DNA of 64,000 nucleotides, taken from IMG/VR virus record IMGVR_UViG_3300047322_001237, positions 1 to 64,000 of that record; one strand, 5' to 3'. This document shows positions 50,515 to 61,313 of the stretch, in pieces. Numbering within the stretch: the first letter of the stretch is position 1; each line of letters begins with the position of its first letter. The notes below the pieces were generated by a model. That model worked only from the letters and a program-made list of their open reading frames with translations. It made no database searches and had not been told where the DNA came from. The translations under genes were made by a program, and so were the position numbers.

Positions 50515-51768
50515 TTAGCTACCGCTCACACTTAAATCACAGCCAATCCGTAAGAAGAATGCAGGACTGATGTCCCGCGCGTTCATCGGATTGCGTGAAT
50601 CAGTGAGCGTTACTTGTGCTTTCGATTCCACCGTATTGAAGAGATAGTTGTCGCGCAATGTGTCTTCCGTCGTCAGTGCCCACTGGCCGTCTTCTTTGAT
50701 CGACCAGTATTCCGACACCTTCCCGTATCCGGCGACGAGCGGCCACTCAGGCTCAACATAGCTCACGTACAGGTTCGGAAACTTCGCAGCCCGTACCCGC
50801 ACCAGATCCGTCCAGAGCTCGGTGTTGTTGACCAACACGACAAACGACTGAGACAGGGTGAGATACGCCTCGATGAAGTCGTCCGAGAGCATGTCGTCCA
50901 CCGAGAAGGCTTCCGAATTGTTCGGGTAGCTCGTGAGCGGCAAACTGGACAGATCGATGAACGGCTTCGACTCGAAGTAGCGCTCAAACAGCGGCAGGTT
51001 ATTGAAGTCGATCATGATCGAGTTCTTGCCCACCATCCGGACCGTCTTCGAATCGAGGACGTGCAGGTACCCGCCGACCACCACCATCACGGTGTAGTTG
51101 GTTAGGTCCCGCCCCAAATTCAGATATGCGTGGTTGGCGTAGGACTGCGTGTCCTTCTGCTTGAACAGCATGCTGCTCGTGATCGGGATGTGGGTGAGCT
51201 TGCCGAGATCTTGGAAGCTCACGACGCCGAGCTTGTTCTTCTTCGAATGGATGCAGGACTTCATCCCGTCCGTCACCCAGACGCCCGTCTGCTTGTCCGT
51301 GTCGATCAGATGGAAGAAACCGTTCACCGACACGAGACAGCTCTCGTAGAAGGTCTCGTAGTTGATGTCCGAACGCGTCAGGAGCAGGTCGGTCTTTTCC
51401 GAGGTTGGCAGGGGGGCGGTGACCGACGCACGATGGCTGATAGGCGTGATGCTGTAACCCGCGCGGAAGCCGTCCTGATAGCGCGCGTACTTTGTCGACA
51501 GCGTGGGGATCGTGGTGGTGGTCGGAAGTGCCTTGTTCCCGAGGCCAGCCAGATACGCATTGAACGTCTGAAACTGGTTCGTGATCTTGGGGAGAATCTT
51601 GTTCAGATTCAGGCTGACGTTGCCTGCCAAGAAGGTGTTCGAAAGGACCGCGTACACGGTCGAATAGTTCTGAATAACCGTGGCAAACGTCATGTTGCCA
51701 AGGTCAATGGCGCTCCATTTTTCGCCGTTTGTGAGCGACTTGCCAATGGCACTTACCAAGGTATACAT
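50515..51768 (-). CDS. Virion structural protein, probably baseplate
   Basis: 417 aa, MYTLVSAIGK N-terminus, CLVSVNGFFH, divergent from the fibre cluster. Confidence 0.65.
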   Translation of the reverse strand: MYTLVSAIGKSLTNGEKWSAIDLGNMTFATVIQNYSTVYAVLSNTFLAGNVSLNLNKILPKITNQFQTFNAYLAGLGNKALPTTTTIPTLSTKYARYQDGFRAGYSITPISHRASVTAPLPTSEKTDLLLTRSDINYETFYESCLVSVNGFFHLIDTDKQTGVWVTDGMKSCIHSKKNKLGVVSFQDLGKLTHIPITSSMLFKQKDTQSYANHAYLNLGRDLTNYTVMVVVGGYLHVLDSKTVRMVGKNSIMIDFNNLPLFERYFESKPFIDLSSLPLTSYPNNSEAFSVDDMLSDDFIEAYLTLSQSFVVLVNNTELWTDLVRVRAAKFPNLYVSYVEPEWPLVAGYGKVSEYWSIKEDGQWALTTEDTLRDNYLFNTVESKAQVTLTDSRNPMNARDISPAFFLRIGCDLSVSGS

Positions 51769-51798
51769 GCGTCTCTCCGAGCAACCGAATCGTAATCG

Positions 51799-51821
51799 TA
51801 TGTCAAGTTGACCTAACCATA
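51799..51821. promoter_or_regulatory. Divergent candidate late promoters (TATG plus 51799-51802, minus 51818-51821) around a GTCAAGTTGAC palindrome
   Basis: Located in the 86-bp gap between divergent structural genes. Confidence 0.45.
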
Positions 51822-51854
51822 CGATGAGCTTTCCGGCGTTCGGGAGTCTTCAGC

Positions 51855-54122
51855 ATGTCCACATCCACTCTTTCGTATCCGTTCGATCCGACGGGTTCGC
51901 TGGCATCGAACCTGATCAAGGGCGAGCAACAACAGCTGGTAGCTCAGAATTTTCGGGACCAGCATCTCATCATTCCGGCCGCCGCGCCGTTCTTCGCTGA
52001 CACCGTCCAGATCACGTATAAAGACACGTCGGGTCAGATCAGCACGCTTCACGAAGGCGTCGACTTTTACTTCACGCACTGGTTCATCTCCGCAAGCCGT
52101 GCTTGCGCGAAACGGGTGTATGGCTCGATCAGTTTCATCGACACCGCACTCGCCGGTATTGTATCCCTTCAATATCAGACGGTCGGTGGTGTCTGGACCC
52201 TGAGCGCGCAGCAGATCGCAACGCTGCTGGCGAACACGCTGGACAACGCACGCGTCACGTCGTGGGAAGAAATCAGCGGCACGCCTTATGCCTTCCCGCC
52301 CGAAGCGCATAGCTGGGACATCACCGATCTTGTCGGCATGACCGAAGTGGTCGATGCGCTTTCCGGCATCCAGACCGTTCTCCAGCAGACTGGCGGCACG
52401 GGTCTGGCCGCGCACATCGCGGACCACGGTAACCCGCACGTCGTGACCGCGACTCAAGTGGGTCTCGGCAAAGTCCAGAACTACGCGACAGCGGCGAACA
52501 GTGACGGGGTAGCGGGTACGTCGACCACCCTGTACATGACGCCAGCAACCACCGCTGCGGCAATCCAGTCGCAGGTGCTGGGTCCGATGAATTCGCACAT
52601 CGCGAACTACTCGAACCCCCACCACGTCACGGCTGCACAGGTGGGCTTGGGCAACGTTCAGAACTACGGCGTGGCCACACCTGCGGATGCTGCAGCTGGC
52701 GTCTCGACGTCGCTCTACATGACGCCTGCCACGACGATGGCTGCGATCAACAACTCGCTGGGCTCGTCACTCAACGCTCACTTGCTCGACTTCAACAACC
52801 CTCACGAAGTCAGCGCGGCACAGGTGGGTCTCGGCAACGTCCGCAACCTGTCGACGGCCACAACCGCCGATGCGATCGCTGGCACGAGCAACGATCTGTA
52901 CATGACGCCTGCCGCCACGGCCGCCGCCCTCAATGCGAGCGGGGCAATGGGTCTGATCACGGCGCACGAGGCGGATTTCACGAATCCGCACCACACGACC
53001 GCTGCTCAGGTCGGCGCTTATTCGAGTGCCCAGATCGATTCCATGTTGCTGGGCTATCTGACGACAACAGGCAAGGCCGCGGACACTTCGCTGTTCAACG
53101 GACTGACCCTGGCGCAAGTGACCTCGCAGATCCTGTCAGGCACGGCCAACAACGCGACCATGCTCGGCGGTATGACGCCCGCGCAGTTTCAGTCGTATGT
53201 GTCCGGCGGCACGGCGAACGACTCCGAAATGTTCGGTGGCATGTCGCCTGCCGACTGGGACACGTATATCGCGAACGCGACGGTGGCAAATGCGAATCTG
53301 GTCTATGGCCTCACGCAAGCGGCGCTCACCTCCGCAATCCTGTCTGGCACCGCCGCCAATGCGTTGGAACTCGGCGGTCAGAACGTCTCTCAGCTAACGG
53401 CCTCCATCCTCGCAGGCACGGCGGCGAATTCGACGCAGCTCAACGGGTTGACGCAGGCCCAGCTGACCTCGGCAATCCTTGCCGGAACGGCGGCGAATGC
53501 GACCGCTCTTGGCGGTCAGTCAGCATCGCAGCTGCAGGCAGCGACCATTGCGGCAAGCAACGCTCAGATGTGGACCGCGGGCACGGTCGCTGCACAAGAA
53601 TCGGTACCTTCGAACACGAGCGCGGCGGCGAACGTCTGGACGCCGATCGGCAAGCTGAATATGCCGGGCAGCGCGCAAACGCAGACGGTGTTTCCGGATG
53701 TTCAATGGCTCGTCGCCGGCGGCGATGCGACCAGCGATACCCAGAGCGGCGCCTGGTTCCTGCGAATCTCGGTGCGTGACACGACGCAGACCAACAACGT
53801 CGCGCTGCAGGCAATTAGCTTGAGTGGCATCAACGTGACCTCGGCTGTTTTTGGCTACACGATCGACAGCACGAACGCGAACGCACCGGTTCTGACGGTC
53901 TGGATGAAAACGCCGGGCCATACGAACCAGATCTCGGTGACTTCGCTCTCGGAAAACACCAGCCAGTTCCTCTCGACGATCGCGCAAGTCACGACGGAGC
54001 CGACCGGCATCGTCTACACGACGACAGACACGTTTGCCCTGGCTTCCGAGATGAGCAACATGCTCACGCAGTTGACCACTGCCTTCACCACGCTCGCCAA
54101 CGCGGTGAACGGTACCTCCTAA
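51855..54122 (+). CDS. Tail fibre protein 1
   Basis: YPFDPTG..ASN N-terminal attachment domain, NPHxVTAAQVGLG repeats, A.NA..L.G repeats and a beta-rich C-terminal domain. Confidence 0.8.
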   Translation: MSTSTLSYPFDPTGSLASNLIKGEQQQLVAQNFRDQHLIIPAAAPFFADTVQITYKDTSGQISTLHEGVDFYFTHWFISASRACAKRVYGSISFIDTALAGIVSLQYQTVGGVWTLSAQQIATLLANTLDNARVTSWEEISGTPYAFPPEAHSWDITDLVGMTEVVDALSGIQTVLQQTGGTGLAAHIADHGNPHVVTATQVGLGKVQNYATAANSDGVAGTSTTLYMTPATTAAAIQSQVLGPMNSHIANYSNPHHVTAAQVGLGNVQNYGVATPADAAAGVSTSLYMTPATTMAAINNSLGSSLNAHLLDFNNPHEVSAAQVGLGNVRNLSTATTADAIAGTSNDLYMTPAATAAALNASGAMGLITAHEADFTNPHHTTAAQVGAYSSAQIDSMLLGYLTTTGKAADTSLFNGLTLAQVTSQILSGTANNATMLGGMTPAQFQSYVSGGTANDSEMFGGMSPADWDTYIANATVANANLVYGLTQAALTSAILSGTAANALELGGQNVSQLTASILAGTAANSTQLNGLTQAQLTSAILAGTAANATALGGQSASQLQAATIAASNAQMWTAGTVAAQESVPSNTSAAANVWTPIGKLNMPGSAQTQTVFPDVQWLVAGGDATSDTQSGAWFLRISVRDTTQTNNVALQAISLSGINVTSAVFGYTIDSTNANAPVLTVWMKTPGHTNQISVTSLSENTSQFLSTIAQVTTEPTGIVYTTTDTFALASEMSNMLTQLTTAFTTLANAVNGTS
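52431..53010 (+). repeat. Coding tandem repeats (NPH motif)
   Basis: NPH codons at 52431, 52614, 52797 and 52983, periods 183, 183 and 186 bp. Confidence 0.85.
53090..53530 (+). repeat. Coding tandem repeats of about 24 aa (A.N...L.G.T..Q)
   Basis: ANNATMLGGMTPAQ, ANDSEMFGGMSPAD, ANANLVYGLTQAA, ANALELGGQNVSQ, ANSTQLNGLTQAQ, ANATALGGQSASQ. Confidence 0.8.
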
Positions 54123-54242
54123 CGACTTTCCCGACCCTCCTCAAGACCCACGTTAGGCGGCAGGTGCGCCCGGCGTGGGCTTGGGCATGGTCGCCGTATG
54201 TATTCAAGCCGGGCATTCGTGCTCTGGCCGGAGTCAACCCTT

Positions 54243-55649
54243 ATGTCTACGCCACCGCTTACGCTACCTTTGGACCCAACCGGTAGCGCAGCCAGCAATC
54301 TCATCACGGCTGAGGTCCAAACGATCGGAACGCGCGGCACGCGGGCGTTTCCGGTCAACTACGGTCTTTTTTTCCGGAAGTCTTTGGTCGTTAAAGACAC
54401 GACCACGAACAAGGTTCTCGTTCAGGGGACGCAGTACTACGCCACGCAGATGGACGTCGAAGCCTCGATGCGGTACGGACAGGAGATCGACGCGAGCATC
54501 GTCATCACCGATTCGACCGTGGGCTCGAGCGTCAGCGTCACGTACCAGGCGCTGGGTGGTGTCAACAGCATTTCGCAGGCTGCGGTGACCACAGCGGTCA
54601 CGGCTTTGCAGATCGACGACGCGCCCGCAACCTGGGCGAGCATTACGAACAAGCCAAGCAAATACCCGGTCGCGCCTCACCAGCACATCGCTGATGACAT
54701 GTACGGCATGGAGTTTGTCGTTGTTGCATTGAATCGTCTCGGAAGCGCGATCCAGTTGGGGCAGGGTACAGCACAGGCTGAGTTGCAAGCATACGCCGAG
54801 GCGGTCATTCAGGAGCTCATCGGTCAGATCGCCGCTGCAAACGCGGCGCTCAACGCGCACACGACGAATTTTGGCAACCCGCACCAGGTGACGGCGCATC
54901 AGATCGGATCGTACACGACCGAGGAAACGACGGCGGCTCTTGCGACAGAGACTACGAACCGGACCAACGGCGACTCGTCGATCCAGAGTCAGCTCAATAC
55001 GCATACGGCCGATCACACCAATCCGCACAAGGTCACAACCGCGCAGCTCGGGGCATTCAGCGCGACGCAGTCAGATTCGGCGATGACGGCCATGCAGACC
55101 GCACTGCAAAGCACGATTACGGCGAACGAGACGACCCAGAACGCGCACATTGCGAACTACAGCAACCCTCACCAAGTCACCGCTGCGCAGATCGGGACGT
55201 GGACCACGGGACAGATTGCGAGCGCCGTGGCCTCCTCGCAAGCGACGTTGCAAACGCAGGTGACTGCATTCGAAAGCTCGCTCAACGCGCACACGTCGAA
55301 CAAAAGCAACCCGCACAGCGACACCGCGGCCAACATCGGAACGTGGACGTACACGACGATCCAGAACTCGATCGTGAGTCCATACACGTCGCACGTCAAC
55401 AATAAGAGCAATCCGCATGGGGTGACGATCGCGCAGCTCGGCACGTATGCCGCCACGGACATCAACAACAATATCGCCGCGTATTACGGGAATGTCGTGA
55501 ACGAAGTCAATGCGCTAAACGGCACGATCAACGCCCACGTCAGCAATCAGAACAACCCACACGGGGACAACGTGAACAACACCGGCGGTGCGTACACCGG
55601 CGCGTACCTGCAGAACCTTATCAACACCACGTTGCATTCCCCAGGTTGA
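54243..55649 (+). CDS. Tail fibre protein 2
   Basis: Start ATG 54243 (LPLDPTGSAASN), GGAG RBS, many NPH repeats. Confidence 0.8.
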   Translation: MSTPPLTLPLDPTGSAASNLITAEVQTIGTRGTRAFPVNYGLFFRKSLVVKDTTTNKVLVQGTQYYATQMDVEASMRYGQEIDASIVITDSTVGSSVSVTYQALGGVNSISQAAVTTAVTALQIDDAPATWASITNKPSKYPVAPHQHIADDMYGMEFVVVALNRLGSAIQLGQGTAQAELQAYAEAVIQELIGQIAAANAALNAHTTNFGNPHQVTAHQIGSYTTEETTAALATETTNRTNGDSSIQSQLNTHTADHTNPHKVTTAQLGAFSATQSDSAMTAMQTALQSTITANETTQNAHIANYSNPHQVTAAQIGTWTTGQIASAVASSQATLQTQVTAFESSLNAHTSNKSNPHSDTAANIGTWTYTTIQNSIVSPYTSHVNNKSNPHGVTIAQLGTYAATDINNNIAAYYGNVVNEVNALNGTINAHVSNQNNPHGDNVNNTGGAYTGAYLQNLINTTLHSPG

Positions 55650-55668
55650 TCGACGGAGTAAAGGAAAC

Positions 55669-57078
55669 ATGACACCGAATCTCTATCGGTATCCGCTGGA
55701 TAAGACCGGTCAAAGTAAGGATAACTACGTGACGGGCGACGCCCACGCGATCGGGACGGATCCAGTCAGAGCCATTGCGCCTAACTACGGCGCGTTCTTC
55801 GCAGCGTCGATGGAGATCGTCGACAGCTTCACCCAGAAGACGCTAGACGGCACGCAGTACGAATTCCAGTTTCTGCACGAAGGAGCATCGCGCCTGGTCG
55901 GGCAGGAGATCTACGGCGTCGTGGTGATTACCGACCCGACGGTGGGTCCGAATGTCGAGTTGAGCTATCAGGCGCTCGGTGGCGAATACAGTCGCCCGAT
56001 TGCAGCGATTGCGACTGAAGTCGCGACGTTGGCGAACGACAATCGGAGCGTGAAGTTCTCGAACATCACGGATCTGCCGGATACGTTCCCTCCCGTTTTG
56101 CATATGCATGCGGTGGGCGACACGTACAACTGGGACTACGTGGTAAGCGCGCTCGAGATGATTTTGAATGCGATGACGCTCATCAAGGCGTCCTCGTACG
56201 ACTCGACGCTGAACTACGTCGACCAGCAGGCCGCCCTTCGCAACGCAGACATCGCGAACTTGGCCCAGGCGCTCGCGGCACACATCGCGAACAAGAACAA
56301 TCCTCACCAGGTCACCCTCGCTCAGGTCGATGTGTGCTCGTCAACCCAAGTGAACGGCCTGATCGCAATCGAGGCAAGTGCTCGCACGGCCGGTGACGCG
56401 ACGCTGACGACGAACATCACGGCGCACGCGACCCGTACGGATAATCCGCATCAGGTGACCGCTGCGCAAGCAGGCGGTTACACCACGACGCAGGCCGACG
56501 CGAACCTGAACGCCATCACCACGGCGCTCAACGCGACGCTCACGACCGACGCGGCCGCGATGAGTGCGCACATCGCGAACAAGAACAACCCGCACCGGGT
56601 CACGCTCACGCAGATCAACGGACAGACGACGGCGCAGATCAATACCACGATCAGCAACGCGATGTCGCCTGTCACGACGCAGCTGAACGCTGATGAAGCG
56701 ACGATGAGCGCGCACATTGCGAACACGAGCAATCCGCACGGTGTGACGCTCACACAGATCAACGGGTGGGACAGCGCCAGTATCGGGAACGTCAATAGCG
56801 GTGTGGCGAGCCACATCGCCAGTACGAACAACCCGCACCAGGTGACGACGGCGCAAATCGGCACGCTCACCGCGACGCAGATCAACAACAACATCGCCAA
56901 CAACTTCACGACGCCTGCGCAGGTCTCGTACCTGAACCCACAGACGAACTGGATCAACAGTCACATCTACAACTACAGCAACCCCCACAACGTGACGGTC
57001 GCTCAGTTGGGTGGCTGGACGTACGCCCAATGGCAATCGGCCTTGGCAACGGCGGTCTACAACCTTTCGTATCACTAA
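55669..57078 (+). CDS. Tail fibre protein 3
   Basis: Start ATG 55669 (YPLDKTG), AAGGA RBS, many NPH repeats. Confidence 0.8.
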   Translation: MTPNLYRYPLDKTGQSKDNYVTGDAHAIGTDPVRAIAPNYGAFFAASMEIVDSFTQKTLDGTQYEFQFLHEGASRLVGQEIYGVVVITDPTVGPNVELSYQALGGEYSRPIAAIATEVATLANDNRSVKFSNITDLPDTFPPVLHMHAVGDTYNWDYVVSALEMILNAMTLIKASSYDSTLNYVDQQAALRNADIANLAQALAAHIANKNNPHQVTLAQVDVCSSTQVNGLIAIEASARTAGDATLTTNITAHATRTDNPHQVTAAQAGGYTTTQADANLNAITTALNATLTTDAAAMSAHIANKNNPHRVTLTQINGQTTAQINTTISNAMSPVTTQLNADEATMSAHIANTSNPHGVTLTQINGWDSASIGNVNSGVASHIASTNNPHQVTTAQIGTLTATQINNNIANNFTTPAQVSYLNPQTNWINSHIYNYSNPHNVTVAQLGGWTYAQWQSALATAVYNLSYH

Positions 57079-57105
57079 GCGGTGCTTGGTGGGAGGAAAT
57101 ACATC

Positions 57106-59628
57106 ATGTCAGAAGTCTTGACTTTGCCGCTGGATCCCACGGCTAAGGCACCGACCAATCACATTACGTCGGAGAACCACAGTATCGGATCCGGACTGAT
57201 TCGTGCGTTCGCGCCGGCCTATGGCGGCTTCTACGAATCGAGCCTGAAGATAACTGATGTCGCGACGGGCCGGCCCGTCACTGCATCGCAGTACTTCACC
57301 ACCGGGCTGATGGACCTCGCAACGACGAAGTATGGCACGCCGAACAACACCAATGTCGTGTCGCTCGTCGTCGTGACCGATGCGAGCGTGTCCGGCAACC
57401 TCGTGATCGAGTACCAGGCCCTGGGTGCTGGGTTTGCTACGCCCCAGACAGTGCTTGCATCCGAAGTCGACACGTTCGAACCGGCGACGCGTCCGTCGAC
57501 GTGGCCGTCGGTGGTTGACCGCACGGCCGATGTGCCGCCATCGCAAGCAATGCATGATGAGGGGCAGGCGGGTCTCATCACATTCGAGTATGTCGTGCAT
57601 GCCATCGACCGCATTGCACAACTCGCGATCATGGGCGACCCGCTCGCGCAGTCGCGCGTTCGTGCGTACGCCGACGCGATGGAGAACGGCGAACTTCAGA
57701 TCGTCTCAGGTCAGAACACATCACTCGCTGCGCACATCGCGAACCACAGCAACCCGCACCAGGTGACGTCCGCGCAGCTCGGCGCGATGACGGAGGCGCA
57801 GCAGGACGCAGCTATTCTTGTTGAGACGCAGGCACGACAGGCAGGGGATGTGAATGCCACGCAGACGTTGACCAGCCACACCTCCAACCAGAATAACCCG
57901 CACAACGTCACGCTGACCCAGGTGGGGATGTACTCAGTATCGCAGGCGAATGGGAAGATCAGTGCTGCCCAAACGAGCGTCAACGCGACCATCAGCGCGA
58001 ACGCGGCCGCGATGACCGCGCACCTGAACGATACCAACAATCCTCACCAGGTGACGGTCACCCAGTTAGGCACGGAAAGCGTATCGGCGATCCAAGCAGC
58101 GATCTCGGCTGCGGCAGCCACGGTGTCGAGCAGTGCTAGCAGTGCAAGTTCAACGCTGAGCACGCACGTGTCCAACACGAACAACCCCCACGCCGTCACC
58201 CCGGCGCAATTGGGTACGTGGACGTCGGCTGCGTTGACGACGTTGATGAACACGCTTAACAGCCATATCGCCAACAAGAGCAATCCGCATAACGTGACGA
58301 TCGGACAGCTAGGAGGGATGACGCAGGCGCAGTACTCCGCGGCCATCACCGCTGCGTCGAACTGGATGGCGGGAATCTTCAACTCGAATTCGTCGAGCAT
58401 CAACAACCATATCGGGAACTACAACAACCCGCATGGCGTTAATGCGCAAGCCCTCGGCGCGGTTGGACCGTGGAATAACCTCGGTGGCGATCTGGCCAAC
58501 GCGCAGGCTCAGATCAACGCAAGTGGTCACCAGGTCACGGAAACGGGCACGCAGTACTACAACATCAACTACTCCGGTGCGATGGCTGCCAACTTTGGAC
58601 GCCAGTTGGAGATTTGCTATGCGATCACGGATTCGGCGTATTGGCGACCCACCGGCGGTGACACTACCGTAACAGGAAGCTTCCCCTGGTTCAGCGCGCC
58701 CGGCGGGGCGCAACTCCAGGGCTTCTTCCGGTCGGGCAACATCATCACGATCATTGTTCTGAATGGCAGCCTGGACGGGATGGTGTTCCACTCGTCGCTT
58801 GGCGAGAATCTGGCCCTGTCCAACGATCGGTCGTATACGTTCATGCAAACGGGGGCCGGACTCTACACGGCATACTCCGCCGTCTCGAACGTCGGTCAGA
58901 CCGGCTCGCCGCGCAGCTACGCAGTAATCATTCAGGGCTGGCCGAGCCGCGGTCAACCACCGCTGTACTACGTTAACAATGCTGCGCCGCCGCCGGACAA
59001 CTCAGGTGGTGGTGGTGGCGATGTGTCAGTCTGCTGCTTCACGGCAGGCAGTCTGGTGCTCATGGCGGATCAGAGCTGGAAGCCGATCGAAACCGTCCGC
59101 AAGGGCGATTGGGTCATGGGTGCGACGGGACCGGAAGAAGTTCAGCGTCTCCACGTCTCCCGCCTGGGCCATCGTCACCTGATGGGGTTCGCCGGCGAGC
59201 GGTTGCGTTGGAGCGAGGAGCATTCGTTCTGGGCTCGCAAGGACGGCCGTCAGTGGTGGTGGTCAGCCAATCCTGCCATGTGGCGAAAGGAAGTCGAGCT
59301 CGGCGTGGTCAAGGGATTGAAGGATCTTTACAGCCACTTCGATGGAGACGTTGATTTCGCCCATCTCGACGGTTTCGTCAGACGCAAAGTTGAAGTGATG
59401 CCGTCGACGCCGGACACGCTGGTGTATCTTCCGGTGACGAAGGGATCCCCGATCATTGTGGATGGTTACGTGGTCGGAGCCTCAGTCAACGAGTTCATGT
59501 ACGACTATGCGTCGCTCGATTGGCTCGAGCACGTGCGCAGTCACAGGAAGGCTGCTGTCGGTCTGGAAAAGAAGTCGCGGGTACGTCGCTGGAAGGACGG
59601 CCTCAAACGCCTGCTCTGGATGAAGTAA
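57106..59628 (+). CDS. Tail fibre protein 4 with C-terminal Hint autoprocessing domain
   Basis: Start ATG 57106 (LPLDPTAK), NPH repeats, a beta-rich domain and PPP/GGGGG linker. Then CFTAGSLVLMAD (59035), SEEH and VYLPVTKGSPIIVDGYVV. Confidence 0.82.
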   Translation: MSEVLTLPLDPTAKAPTNHITSENHSIGSGLIRAFAPAYGGFYESSLKITDVATGRPVTASQYFTTGLMDLATTKYGTPNNTNVVSLVVVTDASVSGNLVIEYQALGAGFATPQTVLASEVDTFEPATRPSTWPSVVDRTADVPPSQAMHDEGQAGLITFEYVVHAIDRIAQLAIMGDPLAQSRVRAYADAMENGELQIVSGQNTSLAAHIANHSNPHQVTSAQLGAMTEAQQDAAILVETQARQAGDVNATQTLTSHTSNQNNPHNVTLTQVGMYSVSQANGKISAAQTSVNATISANAAAMTAHLNDTNNPHQVTVTQLGTESVSAIQAAISAAAATVSSSASSASSTLSTHVSNTNNPHAVTPAQLGTWTSAALTTLMNTLNSHIANKSNPHNVTIGQLGGMTQAQYSAAITAASNWMAGIFNSNSSSINNHIGNYNNPHGVNAQALGAVGPWNNLGGDLANAQAQINASGHQVTETGTQYYNINYSGAMAANFGRQLEICYAITDSAYWRPTGGDTTVTGSFPWFSAPGGAQLQGFFRSGNIITIIVLNGSLDGMVFHSSLGENLALSNDRSYTFMQTGAGLYTAYSAVSNVGQTGSPRSYAVIIQGWPSRGQPPLYYVNNAAPPPDNSGGGGGDVSVCCFTAGSLVLMADQSWKPIETVRKGDWVMGATGPEEVQRLHVSRLGHRHLMGFAGERLRWSEEHSFWARKDGRQWWWSANPAMWRKEVELGVVKGLKDLYSHFDGDVDFAHLDGFVRRKVEVMPSTPDTLVYLPVTKGSPIIVDGYVVGASVNEFMYDYASLDWLEHVRSHRKAAVGLEKKSRVRRWKDGLKRLLWMK

Positions 59629-59650
59629 GAGGGTGGTGAGCTACACGCGT

Positions 59651-59696
59651 ACGGCCGGGCGGGAAACCGCTCCGGCTTTATGCCGTGATTTCTATG
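59651..59696 (+). terminator. Hairpin-TTATGCCG element followed by a second TATG
   Basis: gccgggcgg-gaaa-ccgctccggc-tttatgccg, then tctatgaggg upstream of ORF 59746. Confidence 0.6.
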
Positions 59697-59745
59697 AGGG
59701 AAATACACAACGAACCCTCGTAACGCTCATCCATAAGGCCCTAGC

Positions 59746-60231
59746 ATGCCGACTCCCCTCTGCGACTACAGCAAGAAGTCCCAGGACATCATTCGGGACC
59801 TCATCTACGCGAGCAACGGTTTCATGTTGCCTGCGACCGGCGTGCTGTTTGGCAATCCAACTAGCACCACCCCGCTCGTTGCCGACGCCTATCAGCGCGA
59901 CACATTCGTCCGGTTGTCGATGGACCCGAACGTGTTTCCTCGTCGCTATCGCGGCTCCCGCACCTTCCTTTACAAGCGAATCGATCTGAGCACCTTGAAG
60001 GCGTCTGCATCAACGCCAACACCGATCCAGGTCATCAGCTTGCCGACGGACACGTACACCTTGCTCAACCAGATCAACGCCTACTATGGCCTGCAACTGG
60101 CACAGGCAGACGTGCAGAACATCACCTACGGATCTGTCAACGGTGCTGTCCTGGCGGCCGACGTTACCTCTCTTGCCTTTCAGGGATACCTCACACTGAA
60201 CCTTCAGTTGGCCACCCCTGTTCAGGCATAG
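59746..60231 (+). CDS. Small virion/fibre-associated structural protein
   Basis: 161 aa with the FLYKRIDLSTL (Y.R.DL) motif recurrent in phiKZ-like tail-associated proteins. Confidence 0.6.
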   Translation: MPTPLCDYSKKSQDIIRDLIYASNGFMLPATGVLFGNPTSTTPLVADAYQRDTFVRLSMDPNVFPRRYRGSRTFLYKRIDLSTLKASASTPTPIQVISLPTDTYTLLNQINAYYGLQLAQADVQNITYGSVNGAVLAADVTSLAFQGYLTLNLQLATPVQA

Positions 60232-60262
60232 CTAGTCCGCCTTCGGGGATAGGGGCGACTAG

Positions 60263-60308
60263 ACGTCATAAAAGCCAGAGTGGACCCAGTCCACTCTGGC
60301 CTTATGTC
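60263..60308. terminator. CATA-hairpin-TATG element at convergent junction
   Basis: acgtcataaa-agccagagtggac-cca-gtccactctggc-cttatgtc. A second hairpin lies just before it (60232-60262). Confidence 0.7.
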
Positions 60309-60323
60309 CGTCACGGCATCCAT

Positions 60324-61313
60324 TCAGACGATATTCCCGCCTGTCGCGGATTGAGGGAAAATCGACGCGCTGACCTTCTGCGCACCAAAACTCGCCACAA
60401 CACTGCCTTGCTCGGCGGGGTTGGGCACTTGATAAAAGTGTCCCTCCAACTCAACAGGCGTGGTCGCAGCAGCGTTAGGATCGGCCATCGCTAGCACCTC
60501 TTCGCGGTTAGGAAAGCCCAGTCCTTCAGGCATCGGTACAAAGCGCGCACCCATCGAGAGTGCCGTCTGTTCGGCCTTCGACATGTTCGCATTCGGAGCA
60601 GGAAGTCCGCTCGATCCGTCCTCTGCGTTGGCGCCTGGCTCCGGAGCGAGTCGCGCAAAACGGTTCTTCGCAAGGAACATGGTGTCGTAGAGCCCGCGCA
60701 GCTTGGCTTCTTCCTCTGCATCGCGCTCCCCGGTCTGCCGAAGGATCCACTCCTCAGCCTCGAACGGAAACGGCGGTAAGTCCGACAGGTCCGACACTCG
60801 CTTCCGCACTTCAAGATCAATCTTGACCCATGGGAAGAACGTACCATCAGGTTTCAGGAAGAAGTCCACTTCCCACTTCAGTCCCTTGCCAAGCCCTGCC
60901 GGAACTGCGCCGTCGTCGATCACGTACTCGTAGCGGTTCTTGACCATTCCACGATCCGAGAGGACACGAAACTGTTCGAAGTTGTCTTCCGTGGTCGGCA
61001 CGGCCACTTCGGTGTTGCTGCCGTCGGGCTTCCGCACCTTTGTCGTGATCACATACTCGGGAGCAACTTTGCCGCGGATGTTGATGAGCTGCGTTTTCCG
61101 GATGCGGATGCCGCCTTGTCCACCGTTTTGATCGGTCTTCGGGATCTTGAATTCCCACTGCTCCTGATGCTCCGAAAAGCCCCAGCCAGTCGGCACCTTG
61201 ACGGGTTCCGGGAGACGAGCATAGAAAACGTATTCGATTTCCTCGAATGCCTCGCCAGTTGCCTGTTCTTCAAGCGCCACGTCTTCCAGCGCCCGTTTCA
61301 TTAAGCTTGTCAT
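60324..61313 (-). CDS. CYTH-like (triphosphate tunnel) domain protein, possibly head-packaged
   Basis: EIEYVF, IRIRK, YVITTK, KNRY, WEVDFF and KIDLEV follow the CYTH motif order. N-terminal RALE and VALE sites. Confidence 0.65.
   Translation of the reverse strand: MTSLMKRALEDVALEEQATGEAFEEIEYVFYARLPEPVKVPTGWGFSEHQEQWEFKIPKTDQNGGQGGIRIRKTQLINIRGKVAPEYVITTKVRKPDGSNTEVAVPTTEDNFEQFRVLSDRGMVKNRYEYVIDDGAVPAGLGKGLKWEVDFFLKPDGTFFPWVKIDLEVRKRVSDLSDLPPFPFEAEEWILRQTGERDAEEEAKLRGLYDTMFLAKNRFARLAPEPGANAEDGSSGLPAPNANMSKAEQTALSMGARFVPMPEGLGFPNREEVLAMADPNAAATTPVELEGHFYQVPNPAEQGSVVASFGAQKVSASIFPQSATGGNIV

What the first reader, a model, noticed from the sequence alone, without database searches (positions are those of the whole stretch)
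59035..59628. Tail fibre ends in a Hedgehog-type Hint domain plus a basic amphipathic tail: possible self-cleaving or self-ligating fibre system
Seen: after a PPP-DNS-GGGGG linker, fibre 4 continues VSVC-CFTAGSLVLMADQSWKPIETVRKGDWVMG (Hint block A, putative Cys1 at 59035). It has SEEH as block B and ends the fold with VYLPVTKGSPIIVDGYVVGA. The intein/BIL-type terminal HN is absent. The last motif instead parallels the Hedgehog pattern V.APLT.EGTIVV. About 48 aa follow, ending in a Lys/Arg/Trp-rich helix (SRVRRWKDGLKRLLWMK). Known: Hedgehog Hint domains cleave only at their N-terminal Cys via a thioester and use a downstream segment to recruit a hydrophobic nucleophile (sterol). Phage fibres usually use S74 autochaperones instead. 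Inference: this fibre may release its C-terminal 197 aa and leave a thioester-activated tip ending ...VSVC. That tip could hydrolyse or be coupled to a lipid, small molecule or host-surface nucleophile. Only one of the four paralogues has the module.
Basis: partly seen in the sequence, partly recalled or inferred. Interest (0 to 1): 0.82.

Follow-up and report, generated by a model that had tools for sequence, protein, structure and literature searches.

The report
Self-cleaving Hint cap on phage fibre
The fourth tail-fibre gene of this phiKZ-like jumbo phage ends in a genuine Hint (hedgehog/intein-fold) self-cleaving domain from a large, undescribed family found at the far end of many phage fibres, which most likely cuts itself off the finished fibre; nothing supports a Hedgehog-style lipid-coupling device.

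Summary
Fibre 4 (ORF 57082-59628) runs through a Pro/Gly linker into a 163-residue Hint fold (Cys652-Trp814, nt 59035-59523) plus a 34-residue basic helix. AlphaFold gives pLDDT 96. The best structural matches are bacterial/ciliate intein-like (BIL) domains, then inteins and Hedgehog.

The module belongs to a family of at least 420 clusters (50% identity). It is almost always the last domain of phage tail fibres, and sometimes of PilV-like pilus adhesins. Across 124 representatives:
- Cys1 is invariant and the block-B His is present in 123.
- Intein HN, a +1 nucleophile and a C-extein are absent.

The chemistry expected is therefore N-terminal cleavage only, as in type-B BIL and Hedgehog Hint domains. 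My best reading (0.5) is a self-removing maturation or capping pro-domain, a functional analogue of the S74 intramolecular chaperone.

- It is not Hedgehog-type: Pfam Hint scores below threshold, and there is no Cys400 equivalent and no sterol-recognition region.
- The basic tail is confined to the window's own clade.
- Ligation through the thioester is untested.

No cleavage has been shown.

Side finding: relatives with Cys-X repeat linkers always sit next to a radical SAM/SPASM maturase gene.

Novelty: new variant of a known kind. Interest 0.55.

The parts
57082..59628 (+). Fibre 4 gene, the fourth of four tandem paralogous fibre genes. The ORF runs from GTG 57082; the probable start is ATG 57106.
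   Evidence: ORF listed. PHROG hits: phrog_2163 virion structural protein 2.4e-67 and phrog_8147 tail fiber 2.5e-31. tblastn matches phiKZ-like jumbo phage fibre/virion proteins over aa 1-520 only. Paralogy with 51855-54122, 54198-55649 and 55588-57078 shown. Homologues start at MSEV.
58402..58986 (+). Distal (tip) region of the mature fibre, about aa 441-635; presumed receptor-binding part.
   Evidence: It diverges faster than the Hint: 80% against 94% aa identity to the Caballeronia relative, dN/dS 0.106 against 0.050. No family hit. The AF2 model with 8 sequences was poor overall (pLDDT 41; best blocks 56-72 for window aa 541-630), so it was not interpreted.
58987..59034 (+). Pro/Gly-rich linker PPPDNSGGGGGDVSVC, ending in the -1 residue Cys651. 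The predicted scissile bond is Cys651-Cys652.
   Evidence: Sequence read. It is the least constrained segment (dN/dS 0.51). Family linkers are either Gly/Pro-rich or Cys-X repeats, and the -1 residue is T48/S39/C26 of 124.
59035..59523 (+). Hint-fold autoprocessing module, Cys652 to Trp814.
   Evidence: AF2 pLDDT 96.2, all-beta core with one helix. Foldseek PDB hits: BIL2 6y75 (E 2.3e-6), BIL 2lwy, Prp8 inteins, Hedgehog 6tyy and mini-inteins. Foldseek viral hits: 'Hint domain containing protein' of uncultured Caudovirales and Providencia phage PSTNGR1. phmmer finds 420 clusters at E<=1e-3. dN/dS 0.050.
59035..59037 (+). Cys1 (Cys652), the predicted nucleophile for the N-to-S acyl shift.
   Evidence: Invariant in 124/124 family modules and followed by Phe in 123/124. 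Aligns with Cys1 of PI-SceI.
59212..59223 (+). Block B, S-E-E-H (Ser711...His714), equivalent to the intein/Hedgehog TxxH motif.
   Evidence: S117/T6, E114 and H123 of 124. The role of TxxH in the acyl shift is taken from PMC4695875 and PMC8616854.
59230..59325 (+). Family-specific Trp-rich insert (W..R..G.QWWWS.N...W..E...G...GL.D) between block B and the C-terminal Hint strands.
   Evidence: W69, W77-79, W86, E89, G93, G97, L98 and D100 are conserved in 70-98% of 124 modules. It is modelled as a beta-hairpin plus helix 83-91. Function unknown.
59422..59481 (+). Block F/G-equivalent strands VYLPVTKGSPIIVDGYVVGA, with no block-F His and no terminal His-Asn.
   Evidence: Family consensus is LYLP.T.G.PIIVNGYVVGAG.NE. 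Asn at query position 155 (Asn803, codon 59488-59490) is N64/D43/S5 of 124, so it is not a conserved cyclising Asn.
59524..59625 (+). Clade-specific C-terminal tail LEHVRSHRKAAVGLEKKSRVRRWKDGLKRLLWMK: 34 aa, net +9, predicted as one helix.
   Evidence: Helix 166-199, pLDDT 90-93. Present only in P0001-P0006; other long tails in the family are neutral or acidic. dN/dS 0.10 within the clade, but 23% identity and truncated in L025/P0007. The hydrophobic moment is not above shuffles.

Best explanation
Fibre 4 is made as a precursor. Its last 197 residues are a self-removing Hint pro-domain.

- **Shown.** The fold is Hint. The family is large and sits at the extreme C-terminus of phage fibres of many architectures. 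Cys1 and the block-B S/T-x-x-His are essentially invariant. The residues needed for C-terminal cleavage or splicing are missing.
- **Inferred mechanism.**
  1. After the fibre folds or trimerises, Cys652 attacks the Cys651 carbonyl in an N-to-S acyl shift assisted by His714/Ser711.
  2. The resulting thioester is resolved by water.
  3. This leaves a mature fibre ending ...GGGGGDVSVC-COOH and a free 197-aa Hint-plus-helix by-product.
- **Inferred biology.** The module serves as a C-terminal assembly aid and/or transient cap of the receptor-binding tip. In this it would be a functional analogue, not a homologue, of the peptidase-S74 intramolecular chaperone of T5 pb1 and K1F endosialidase.
- **The basic helix.** It is a clade-specific appendage of the discarded part, not a general component of the mechanism.
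For: - **Fold.** AF2 pLDDT 96.2. Foldseek returns Hint-fold hits only, with BIL domains first.
- **Family.**
  - 420 clusters at E<=1e-3 and 180 at <=1e-10.
  - In 123 full modules the median distance from the end of the module to the protein's C-terminus is 9 residues.
- **Catalytic set.** Cys1 124/124, His 123/124, S/T 123/124. Asn155 is only 64/124 and there is no HN.
- **Selection.** The Hint is the most constrained part of the gene, with dN/dS 0.050 against 0.095-0.106 for the fibre body and 0.51 for the linker. This rules out a decaying remnant.
- **Context.**
  - N-terminal partners include collagen-like, tail-collar, gp38-adhesin and GpJ-type fibre domains, and many PHROG tail-fibre families.
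  - In Achromobacter phage JWF it ends the fibre gene next to the J-like tail protein. In the T7-like Providencia phage PSTNGR1 it ends the protein encoded just upstream of a run of small ORFs and the large terminase gene, which I read from gene order as the T7 tail-fibre position.
  - The window, the Caballeronia relative and P0007 share the same four-fibre synteny, with the Hint on the fourth fibre only.
- **Linker.** A flexible Gly/Pro linker precedes Cys1, as expected for an accessible scissile bond.
- **Precedents.** Type-B BILs lack block G and perform cleavage uncoupled from splicing (PMC4031507). C-terminal intramolecular chaperones of fibres are removed by autoproteolysis (PMC10579305).
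Against: - No cleavage has been observed for any member. I found no proteomics or biochemistry in the held literature.
- A chaperone or trimerisation role is pure analogy. No multimer model could be made, and the tip+Hint monomer model failed (pLDDT 41).
- The module also ends PilV-like and type IV pilin-like proteins, which are not trimeric fibres. At least one stand-alone copy has only a 5-residue N-terminal peptide. A fibre-trimerisation role therefore cannot be the whole story.
- A conserved Trp-rich insert and the near-invariant Arg50, Glu65 and Glu89 are unexplained. They could form a binding site for a nucleophile other than water.
Confidence: 0.5

Rival explanations
1. Thioester capture. 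The Cys651 thioester is resolved not by water but by a specific nucleophile. Candidates are a Lys of a neighbouring chain (covalent stapling of the tip), a small molecule or lipid, or an amine or hydroxyl on the host surface, which would make adsorption covalent.
For: - The best structural match, Tetrahymena BIL2, resolves its thioester onto a Lys to form an isopeptide (PMC8616854). Hedgehog transfers to cholesterol (PMC4695875).
- The conserved Trp-rich insert and conserved charged residues have no assigned role.
- The strong T/S/C preference at position -1 and the Cys-X repeat linkers hint at chemistry at the junction.
Against: - There is no conserved adaptor region. The family median after the module is 9 residues, and the basic tail is clade-specific and hydrophilic.
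- Fibres assemble in the cytoplasm, so capture of a host-surface nucleophile would need the precursor to survive uncleaved in the virion.
- No candidate acceptor is identifiable in the sequence.
Confidence: 0.15
2. Retained distal domain. The Hint is not cleaved and forms the outermost knob of the fibre, for example as a glycan-binding domain through its Trp cluster. Cys and His would be conserved for structural or other reasons.
For: - The Trp-rich conserved surface could bind carbohydrate.
- The module is more conserved than the tip domain upstream.
- A stand-alone copy with almost no N-extein exists.
Against: - A receptor-binding knob should evolve fast, as the upstream tip does. This is the slowest-evolving segment, and it is shared at 45-60% identity by fibres of unrelated phages that presumably have different hosts.
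- Invariance of the very first residue after a floppy linker (Cys 124/124), together with the block-B His (123/124), is the signature of catalysis, not of folding.
Confidence: 0.12
3. Self-removing follower domain for a maturase (RiPP-like logic). The Hint docks a modifying enzyme that acts on the residues just upstream, then excises itself.
For: - In related loci every fibre with a Cys-X repeat linker before the Hint (L006, L007, L015, L017, L018, L020, L021/JWF, L022, L023) has a homologous radical SAM/SPASM peptide-maturase-like gene 0-3 kb downstream.
- P0007, in the window's own clade, has CHCVC before Cys1.
Against: - The window fibre has a Gly/Pro linker with only one extra Cys.
- No ORF of 150 aa or more with a CxxxCxxC motif exists in the 64-kb window.
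- No radical SAM gene lies near the homologous genes in L003, L025 and the other Gly/Pro-linker loci.
- For this locus the idea has no partner enzyme in view.
Confidence: 0.05
4. PT-HINT-like release of a payload. Cleavage at Cys652 releases Hint plus the basic helix as an active product, for example one that acts on membranes or binds nucleic acid.
For: - In polymorphic toxins a HINT peptidase sits just upstream of the C-terminal toxin and releases it (PMC3482391).
- The tail has net charge +9 and is under purifying selection within its clade (dN/dS 0.10).
Against: - There was no PT-HINT (PF07591) hit at E<=1.
- 34 residues is not a toxin domain.
- The tail is absent from most of the family and from P0007.
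- Amphipathicity is not significant.
Confidence: 0.04
5. Degenerate intein or mobile-element remnant fused by accident to the fibre's end.
For: The Pfam best hit is Hom_end_hint, block A only.
Against: - There is no C-extein and no endonuclease domain.
- The location is always C-terminal, across at least 420 clusters.
- dN/dS is 0.05.
Confidence: 0.02

Closest known systems
Type-B bacterial intein-like (BIL) domains (Amitai et al. 2003, as summarised in PMC4031507); solved BIL structures 2LWY (C. thermocellum) and 6Y75/6TMM (Tetrahymena BIL2)
   Same: - Hint fold; these are the top Foldseek hits (TM normalised by target 0.69-0.72).
- Cys1 plus a block-B His.
- No +1 nucleophile.
- For type B, no block-G similarity and cleavage uncoupled from splicing.
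- They occur in variable surface or secreted proteins (the last point is from my own knowledge of the BIL literature).
   Different: - Sequence similarity is marginal: 13-17% identity, and the profile against 2LWY gives E 0.012 over blocks A-B only.
- This family is strictly C-terminal with nothing downstream.
- It has a Trp-rich insert and a conserved D-Y-x4-W extension.
- The two solved BILs are A-type or splicing-competent, with a C-terminal Asn.
Hedgehog C-terminal autoprocessing domain (Hog Hint + SRR)
   Same: - N-terminal-only cleavage logic.
- Cys-Phe start and a TxxH-type block B.
- Block F/G strands without His or His-Asn.
- Foldseek rank 9, TM 0.68.
   Different: - Pfam Hint scores 19.8 bits against a gathering score of 29.7, and covers block A only.
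- The -1 residue is T/S/C, not Gly.
- There is no equivalent of Cys400.
- There is no ~70-residue hydrophobic sterol-recognition region. The tail is 34 aa, +9, and clade-specific (PMC4695875).
Peptidase S74 intramolecular chaperone domains of phage fibres and spikes (T5 pb1, K1F endosialidase)
   Same: Same position (extreme C-terminus of a receptor-binding fibre) and the same proposed logic: it helps or caps the fibre and is then removed by autoproteolysis (PMC10579305).
   Different: The fold and chemistry are unrelated: S74 is an alpha-helical core with a Ser-Lys dyad, whereas this is a beta-rich Hint with a Cys thioester. There was no Pfam S74 hit. A chaperone function for the Hint is not shown.
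Pretoxin HINT (PT-HINT, PF07591) of polymorphic toxins
   Same: A bacterial or phage Hint used as an autoprotease at the distal end of a filamentous protein (PMC3482391).
   Different: PT-HINT precedes a toxin domain, and here nothing follows but 9-34 residues. There was no PF07591 hit at E<=1.
Inteins (PI-SceI and Prp8 mini-inteins)
   Same: Best sequence matches: block A to PI-SceI at 2.4e-9, and full-length alignment of the profile to Prp8 inteins at about 1e-5.
   Different: There is no C-extein, no terminal Asn/His-Asn, no +1 Cys/Ser/Thr, no homing endonuclease, and the module is not inserted in a conserved host protein.

Membership tests
HINT superfamily (fold level) | Hint beta-fold | tested here: met
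   AF2 pLDDT 96.2 and pTM 0.91. All listed Foldseek PDB hits (50 shown, E <= 0.018) are Hint-fold proteins, nearly all at probability 0.96-1.00.
HINT superfamily (fold level) | N-terminal nucleophile (Cys/Ser) and block B T/S-x-x-H | tested here: met
   Cys 124/124; S117/T6 and H123 of 124.
Intein | C-terminal Asn (usually His-Asn) followed by a C-extein with a +1 Cys/Ser/Thr | tested here: not met
   The domain ends ...GYVVGASVNEF... and there is no C-extein. The Asn position is N64/D43 of 124 and there is no preceding His.
Intein | Insertion inside a conserved host protein whose halves are ligated | tested here: not met
   The module is terminal in 123/123 full copies, with a median of 9 residues after it.
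Hedgehog Hog domain | Pfam Hint (PF01079) at or above the gathering score | tested here: not met
   19.8 bits against 29.7, block A only.
Hedgehog Hog domain | Gly-Cys-Phe junction | tested here: not met
   Cys-Phe is present, but -1 is Cys here and T48/S39/C26 of 124 in the family.
Hedgehog Hog domain | [quoted passage not shown] | tested here: inconclusive
   There is no Cys in the last strands (GYVVGAS), so the Cys400 equivalent is absent. An Asp303 equivalent could not be assigned without model coordinates. Features taken from PMC4695875.
Hedgehog Hog domain | Sterol-recognition region: about 70 hydrophobic residues after the Hint, required for transfer | tested here: not met
   The tail is 34 aa, net +9, mean Eisenberg hydrophobicity -0.3 to -0.7, and confined to one clade.
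Type-B BIL | Hint with Cys1 and block B, no similarity to intein block G, no +1 nucleophile | tested here: met
   definition taken from PMC4031507.
Type-B BIL | Sequence membership in the described BIL-B family | tested here: inconclusive
   No BIL-B model or sequence was at hand. The solved BILs match by fold (TM 0.69-0.72, 13-17% identity) and weakly by profile (2LWY E 0.012).
Type-B BIL | Demonstrated autocleavage | not testable with these tools
   Needs expression of the precursor with C652A and H714A controls.
PT-HINT (PF07591) | Match to PF07591 and a toxin domain downstream | tested here: not met
   No hit at E<=1. Only a 34-aa helix follows.
Vint (PF14623) / Hint_2 (PF13403) | Pfam score at or above the gathering score | tested here: not met
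   Vint 20.0 against 27; Hint_2 15.0 against 28.4.
Peptidase S74 intramolecular chaperone | S74 fold and Ser-Lys dyad at the fibre C-terminus | tested here: not met
   No Pfam hit and the fold is Hint. The resemblance is functional analogy only.

The most novel reading that the evidence does not exclude
The fibre would be a chemically armed adhesin. The Hint would stay poised on the virion and, on docking, transfer the fibre's C-terminal acyl group from the Cys652 thioester to a nucleophile on the host envelope, or to a neighbouring chain. Adsorption or the fibre tip would then be covalently locked. The conserved Trp-rich insert would be the acceptor-binding site. This would be a phage counterpart of Hedgehog cholesteroylation or BIL2 isopeptide formation.
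Probability: 0.08. Interest if true: 0.9.

Novelty: new variant of a known kind. Interest (0 to 1): 0.55.

Why it matters
Phage fibres are known to mature with separate chaperones or with the S74 self-cleaving chaperone. A second, chemically different self-processing terminus would add a new maturation route for receptor-binding proteins. Here that terminus is a Cys-thioester Hint domain, found on at least 420 sequence clusters of fibres from jumbo, T7-like and siphophage backgrounds, and on some pilus adhesins.

It also matters for three practical reasons:
- **Annotation.** The last ~165-200 residues of such 'fibres' are probably not part of the virion.
- **Fibre engineering.** Constructs must keep or deliberately remove the module.
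- **Protein chemistry.** It may be a natural, compact generator of a C-terminal thioester.

The linked observation that Cys-X repeat versions always travel with a radical SAM/SPASM maturase suggests post-translationally cross-linked fibre tips, which as far as I could find have not been described.

Tried and rejected
- **Megablast** of the gene against 50,697 phage records gave no match. tblastn matched only the N-terminal 520 aa to jumbo phages.
- **PHROGs** had no family for the 200-aa module. **NCBIfam** gave only a trivial intein block-A hit.
- **The search for related loci** with the 122-sequence alignment failed because no conserved stretch was found. It worked with 25 sequences.
- **Genome contigs** gave almost only the Caballeronia contig. 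The family is therefore rare in species-representative bacterial genomes, at least at this pattern sensitivity.
- **AF2 of tip+linker+Hint** (408 aa, 8 sequences) gave pLDDT 41 and was discarded. The tip fold, linker flexibility and any tip-Hint docking are therefore unknown.
- **Model coordinates** are not exposed, so active-site geometry and the Asp303 equivalent could not be checked.
- **Amphipathic-helix claim.** The hydrophobic moment of the last 18 residues is reached by 25% of shuffles. I kept 'basic helix' and dropped 'amphipathic'.
- **C-terminal cleavage at Asn803** (query position 155) was considered because it is invariant among nine close sequences. I rejected it because it is only N64/D43 across the family and is followed by conserved structural residues.
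- **Promoter/terminator scan** of 51500-60400 was at chance level.
- **Literature.** Eight searches and several papers gave no description of a Hint-terminated tail fibre. The hits were inteins in terminase, RNR or helicase genes, or PT-HINT. Most subscription journals are not in the library, so prior description cannot be excluded.
- **L017 aminotransferase.** The class-V aminotransferase gene in L017 is SerC, not a cysteine desulfurase, so it is not part of any system.


Full report
**1. What is in the sequence**

The window belongs to a phiKZ-like jumbo phage.
- It encodes a tail sheath, two multisubunit RNA-polymerase beta-type proteins and a 2381-aa gp181-like tail protein with a lysozyme domain.
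- Its source contig is IMGVR_UViG_3300047322_001237, 278,988 bp.
- A near relative, at 85-92% protein identity over this gene, lies on a 143.7-kb contig in the Caballeronia arationis LMG 29324 assembly.

Four tandem genes encode paralogous fibres: 51855-54122, 54198-55649, 55588-57078 and 57082-59628.
- They share an N-terminal ~450 aa at 25-36% identity, E 1e-21 to 1e-80.
- They match PHROG virion-structural and tail-fibre families.
- They match fibre or virion proteins of Goslar, RP12, 2050HW and similar jumbo phages, but only over residues 1-520.

Fibre 4 alone continues past the shared part. It has a ~200-aa tip region, then the linker PPPDNSGGGGGDVSVC, then CFTAGSLVLMADQSWKPIETVRKGDWVMG.... 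The likely start codon is ATG 57106 rather than GTG 57082.

**2. Is it a Hint domain?**

Yes.
- Pfam sees only block A and only below its gathering scores: Hom_end_hint 25.4, Vint 20.0, Hint 19.8 and Hint_2 15.0 bits.
- A phmmer scan of 1.84 billion cluster representatives found 420 clusters at E<=1e-3, 180 at <=1e-10 and 72 at <=1e-30.
- A profile of 122 of these hits PI-SceI block A at 2.4e-9. It aligns over its whole length with Prp8 mini-inteins at about 1e-5, with weaker hits to Tetrahymena BIL2, the gp41-1 intein, the C. thermocellum BIL and Hedgehog.
- With that alignment AlphaFold2 gives pLDDT 96.2 and pTM 0.91.
- Foldseek against the PDB returns only Hint-fold proteins. In order:
  - BIL2 (6Y75/6TMM; E 2e-6; TM by target 0.72);
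  - the C. thermocellum BIL (2LWY);
  - Prp8 inteins and the PhoCDC21-1 intein;
  - Hedgehog (6TYY, rank 9);
  - many further inteins and mini-inteins.
- Against predicted viral structures, the top hits are 'Hint domain containing protein' of uncultured Caudovirales and the Providencia phage PSTNGR1 protein.

**3. Anatomy of the family**

In 123 full-length modules the domain spans query residues 3/4-166 (Cys652-Trp814 of the window protein). It is the last domain of the protein, with a median of 9 residues after the end of the match and a maximum of 67.

Column counts over 124 sequences:

| Feature | Count |
|---|---|
| Cys1 | 124/124 |
| Phe2 | 123 |
| -1 residue | T48 / S39 / C26 |
| Block B (W-S-x-E-H) | S117/T6, E114, H123 |
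| Arg50 | 121 |
| Asn after the last strands (the only plausible C-terminal cleavage residue) | N64 / D43 / S5 |

- A Trp-rich insert (W69, W77-W79, W86, E89, G93, G97, L98, D100) is conserved.
- The last strands read LYLP.T.G.PIIVNGYVVG, with no block-F His and no terminal His-Asn.
- The Asn position is followed by a conserved D-Y-x4-W segment that is part of the fold.

So the N-terminal catalytic apparatus is under absolute conservation, and the C-terminal splice apparatus is absent. Against the Caballeronia relative, dN/dS by segment is 0.050 for the Hint, 0.095 for the fibre body, 0.106 for the tip, 0.51 for the linker and 0.10 for the tail.

**4. What carries it**

- Pfam and PHROG scans of 89 full-length members found these partners:
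  - collagen repeats;
  - tail-collar domains;
  - gp38 adhesin;
  - GpJ FNIII;
  - PA14 and CBM domains;
  - dozens of PHROG tail-fibre families.
- In Achromobacter phage JWF the module ends gp28, a T4 gp36-like fibre protein next to the J-like tail protein.
- In the T7-like Providencia phage PSTNGR1 it ends the protein encoded just upstream of a run of small ORFs and the large terminase gene, which by gene order I read as the T7 tail-fibre slot.
- Twenty-one IMG/VR loci carry it, including other contigs of 159-282 kb.
- It also ends a PilV-like shufflon protein (P0060) and a type IV pilin-like protein (P0098).
- The window, L003 (Caballeronia) and L025 (P0007) share the same four-fibre synteny, with the Hint on the fourth fibre.

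**5. The tail**

- The 34 residues after Trp814 form a predicted single helix with net charge +9.
- The tail is present only in P0001-P0006, which are 71-93% identical relatives over this region.
- It is replaced by an unrelated 22-residue end in P0007, whose Hint is 67% identical. Other long tails in the family are neutral or acidic.
- Its amphipathicity is not above shuffles.
- It is constrained within its clade (dN/dS 0.10), so it is probably functional there. It is not a family feature, and it does not resemble the ~70-residue hydrophobic sterol-recognition region that Hedgehog needs for transfer (PMC4695875).

**6. Mechanism**

- *Established knowledge.* In Hint domains the first Cys performs an N-to-S acyl shift assisted by the block-B Thr and His. 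Without a +1 nucleophile and a terminal Asn, the thioester can only be resolved by an external nucleophile. That nucleophile is water in type-B BILs (PMC4031507), cholesterol in Hedgehog (PMC4695875) and a Lys in Tetrahymena BIL2 (PMC8616854).
- *Shown here.* The window domain has exactly this residue set and fold.
- *Inferred.* The Cys651-Cys652 bond is cleaved, releasing a 197-aa by-product and a fibre ending ...VSVC.
- *Further inference.* By position and by analogy with S74 intramolecular chaperones and 'transient caps' (PMC10579305), the module aids or caps the fibre tip during assembly, and water is the nucleophile.

I put 0.5 on this whole statement. I put about 0.75 on 'catalytically competent N-terminal autocleavage' alone. 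The rivals are:

| Rival | Confidence |
|---|---|
| Thioester capture or ligation | 0.15 |
| Uncleaved distal binding domain | 0.12 |
| Follower domain for a maturase | 0.05 |
| Payload release | 0.04 |
| Intein remnant | 0.02 |

**7. Comparison with known families**

It works like a type-B BIL or a Hog Hint. It cannot be filed as a Hedgehog-type domain, an intein, PT-HINT or Vint, because defining features were tested and not met (see the membership table). Membership in the published BIL-B family could not be tested for lack of reference sequences. The resemblance to the S74 chaperone is functional only. I found no paper describing a Hint-terminated phage fibre in the held library. Automatic annotations such as 'Hint domain containing protein' do exist for phage proteins.

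**8. Side finding**

Immediately before Cys1 the family uses one of two linker types. One is Gly/Pro-rich, as in the window. The other is alternating Cys-X repeats such as NCNCDCNCS, with up to 10 Cys in 24 residues; 32 of 123 representatives have three or more Cys there.
- Every IMG/VR locus with a Cys-X linker has a homologous radical SAM/SPASM gene just downstream on the same strand. These loci are L006, L007, L015, L017, L018, L020, L021 (JWF), L022 and L023.
  - The gene carries the motif GL[SQ]CNY[SA]C[ES]YC.
  - It hits Pfam Radical_SAM and Fer4_12.
  - In NCBIfam it hits the SPASM domain.
  - It is nearest to the PapB ranthipeptide, QhpD and CcpM maturases, all below their cut-offs.
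- Among the Gly/Pro-linker loci only L013/L014, which hold other radical SAM genes, have any.
- The 64-kb window has no CxxxCxxC ORF of 150 aa or more.

This suggests enzymatically modified Cys-rich fibre tips in that subfamily, with the Hint possibly acting as a self-removing recognition domain. It does not apply visibly to the window locus.

**9. Verdict**

- The feature is a new variant of a known kind: the Hint autoprocessing domain deployed as a fibre terminus.
- Interest is 0.55. It remains substantial because the family is large, appears undescribed, and is directly testable.

Noticed in passing
Related loci L006, L007, L015, L017, L018, L020, L021 (Achromobacter phage JWF), L022, L023: about 25 aa before the Hint Cys1 and 0-3 kb downstream: Fibres whose linker before the Hint is an alternating Cys-X repeat (e.g. 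NCNCDCNCS|CF) are always followed by a homologous radical SAM/SPASM peptide-maturase-like gene (motif GL[SQ]CNY[SA]C[ES]YC). Nearly all Gly/Pro-linker loci, including the window, have none. This looks like a RiPP-style modification of a fibre tip. I found no description of it.
   Followed up: partly
L013/L014 7599-11661: A Hint-ended fibre with a non-repeat linker is followed by three radical-SAM-like ORFs of other families. The first scores 124.7 bits to the PapB ranthipeptide maturase model, below its cut-off.
   Followed up: no
Proteins P0060 (691 aa) and P0098 (660 aa): The same Hint module ends a PilV-like shufflon protein (Shufflon_N 1.2e-32) and a type IV pilin-like protein (N_methyl motif). 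The module is therefore not restricted to trimeric phage fibres.
   Followed up: partly
L036 1247-2469: A stand-alone 179-aa Hint (P0052) has only MNCNT before Cys1. It overlaps by 4 nt the end of a 228-aa gene with an SGGxDS PP-loop motif and a C-terminal Cys cluster. I read this as QueC-like from the motifs; no family search was run. It may generate a short peptide thioester.
   Followed up: partly
Proteins P0057 (4119 aa), P0118, P0128, P0108, P0136: These proteins have 4-7 tandem partial matches to the Hint N-terminal half at ~150-aa spacing. This is reminiscent of BIL/ubiquitin-like polyproteins. Their origin was not examined.
   Followed up: no
window 57082-57108: The listed ORF starts at GTG 57082, but the homologues and the paralogues' conserved N-terminus (M..L.LPLDPTG) point to ATG 57106 as the start. 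Fibres 2 and 3 likewise probably start downstream of the listed ORF starts: the conserved N-termini (MSTPPLTLPLDPTG, MTPNLYRYPLDKTG) begin at about 54243 and 55669.
   Followed up: partly
window 57700-58450 and the other three fibre genes: There are repeated H..N..NPH.V..[AT]Q.G motifs. Three are strict and about six are looser copies in fibre 4, and they are also present in fibres 1-3. The four fibres are almost Cys-free (1, 0, 1 and 3 Cys), and two of fibre 4's three Cys form the Hint junction.
   Followed up: partly
window 59230-59325: A conserved Trp-rich insert (QWWW, W86, E89, GL.D) lies inside the Hint and has no counterpart in the named Hint families. Its function is unknown; it may be a docking or acceptor-binding surface.
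   Followed up: no
window 1-64000; L003/L026: The window is part of a phiKZ-like (multisubunit RNAP) jumbo phage of about 279 kb. A close relative sits as a 143.7-kb contig in the Caballeronia arationis LMG 29324 genome assembly, which suggests a Burkholderiaceae host and phage DNA carried in that culture.
   Followed up: partly
L007 6504-8384 and L006/L007 on one 109-kb contig: One viral contig carries at least three Hint-ended collagen-like fibre genes. Two are adjacent in L007 and a third is in L006, each near a radical SAM gene.
   Followed up: no
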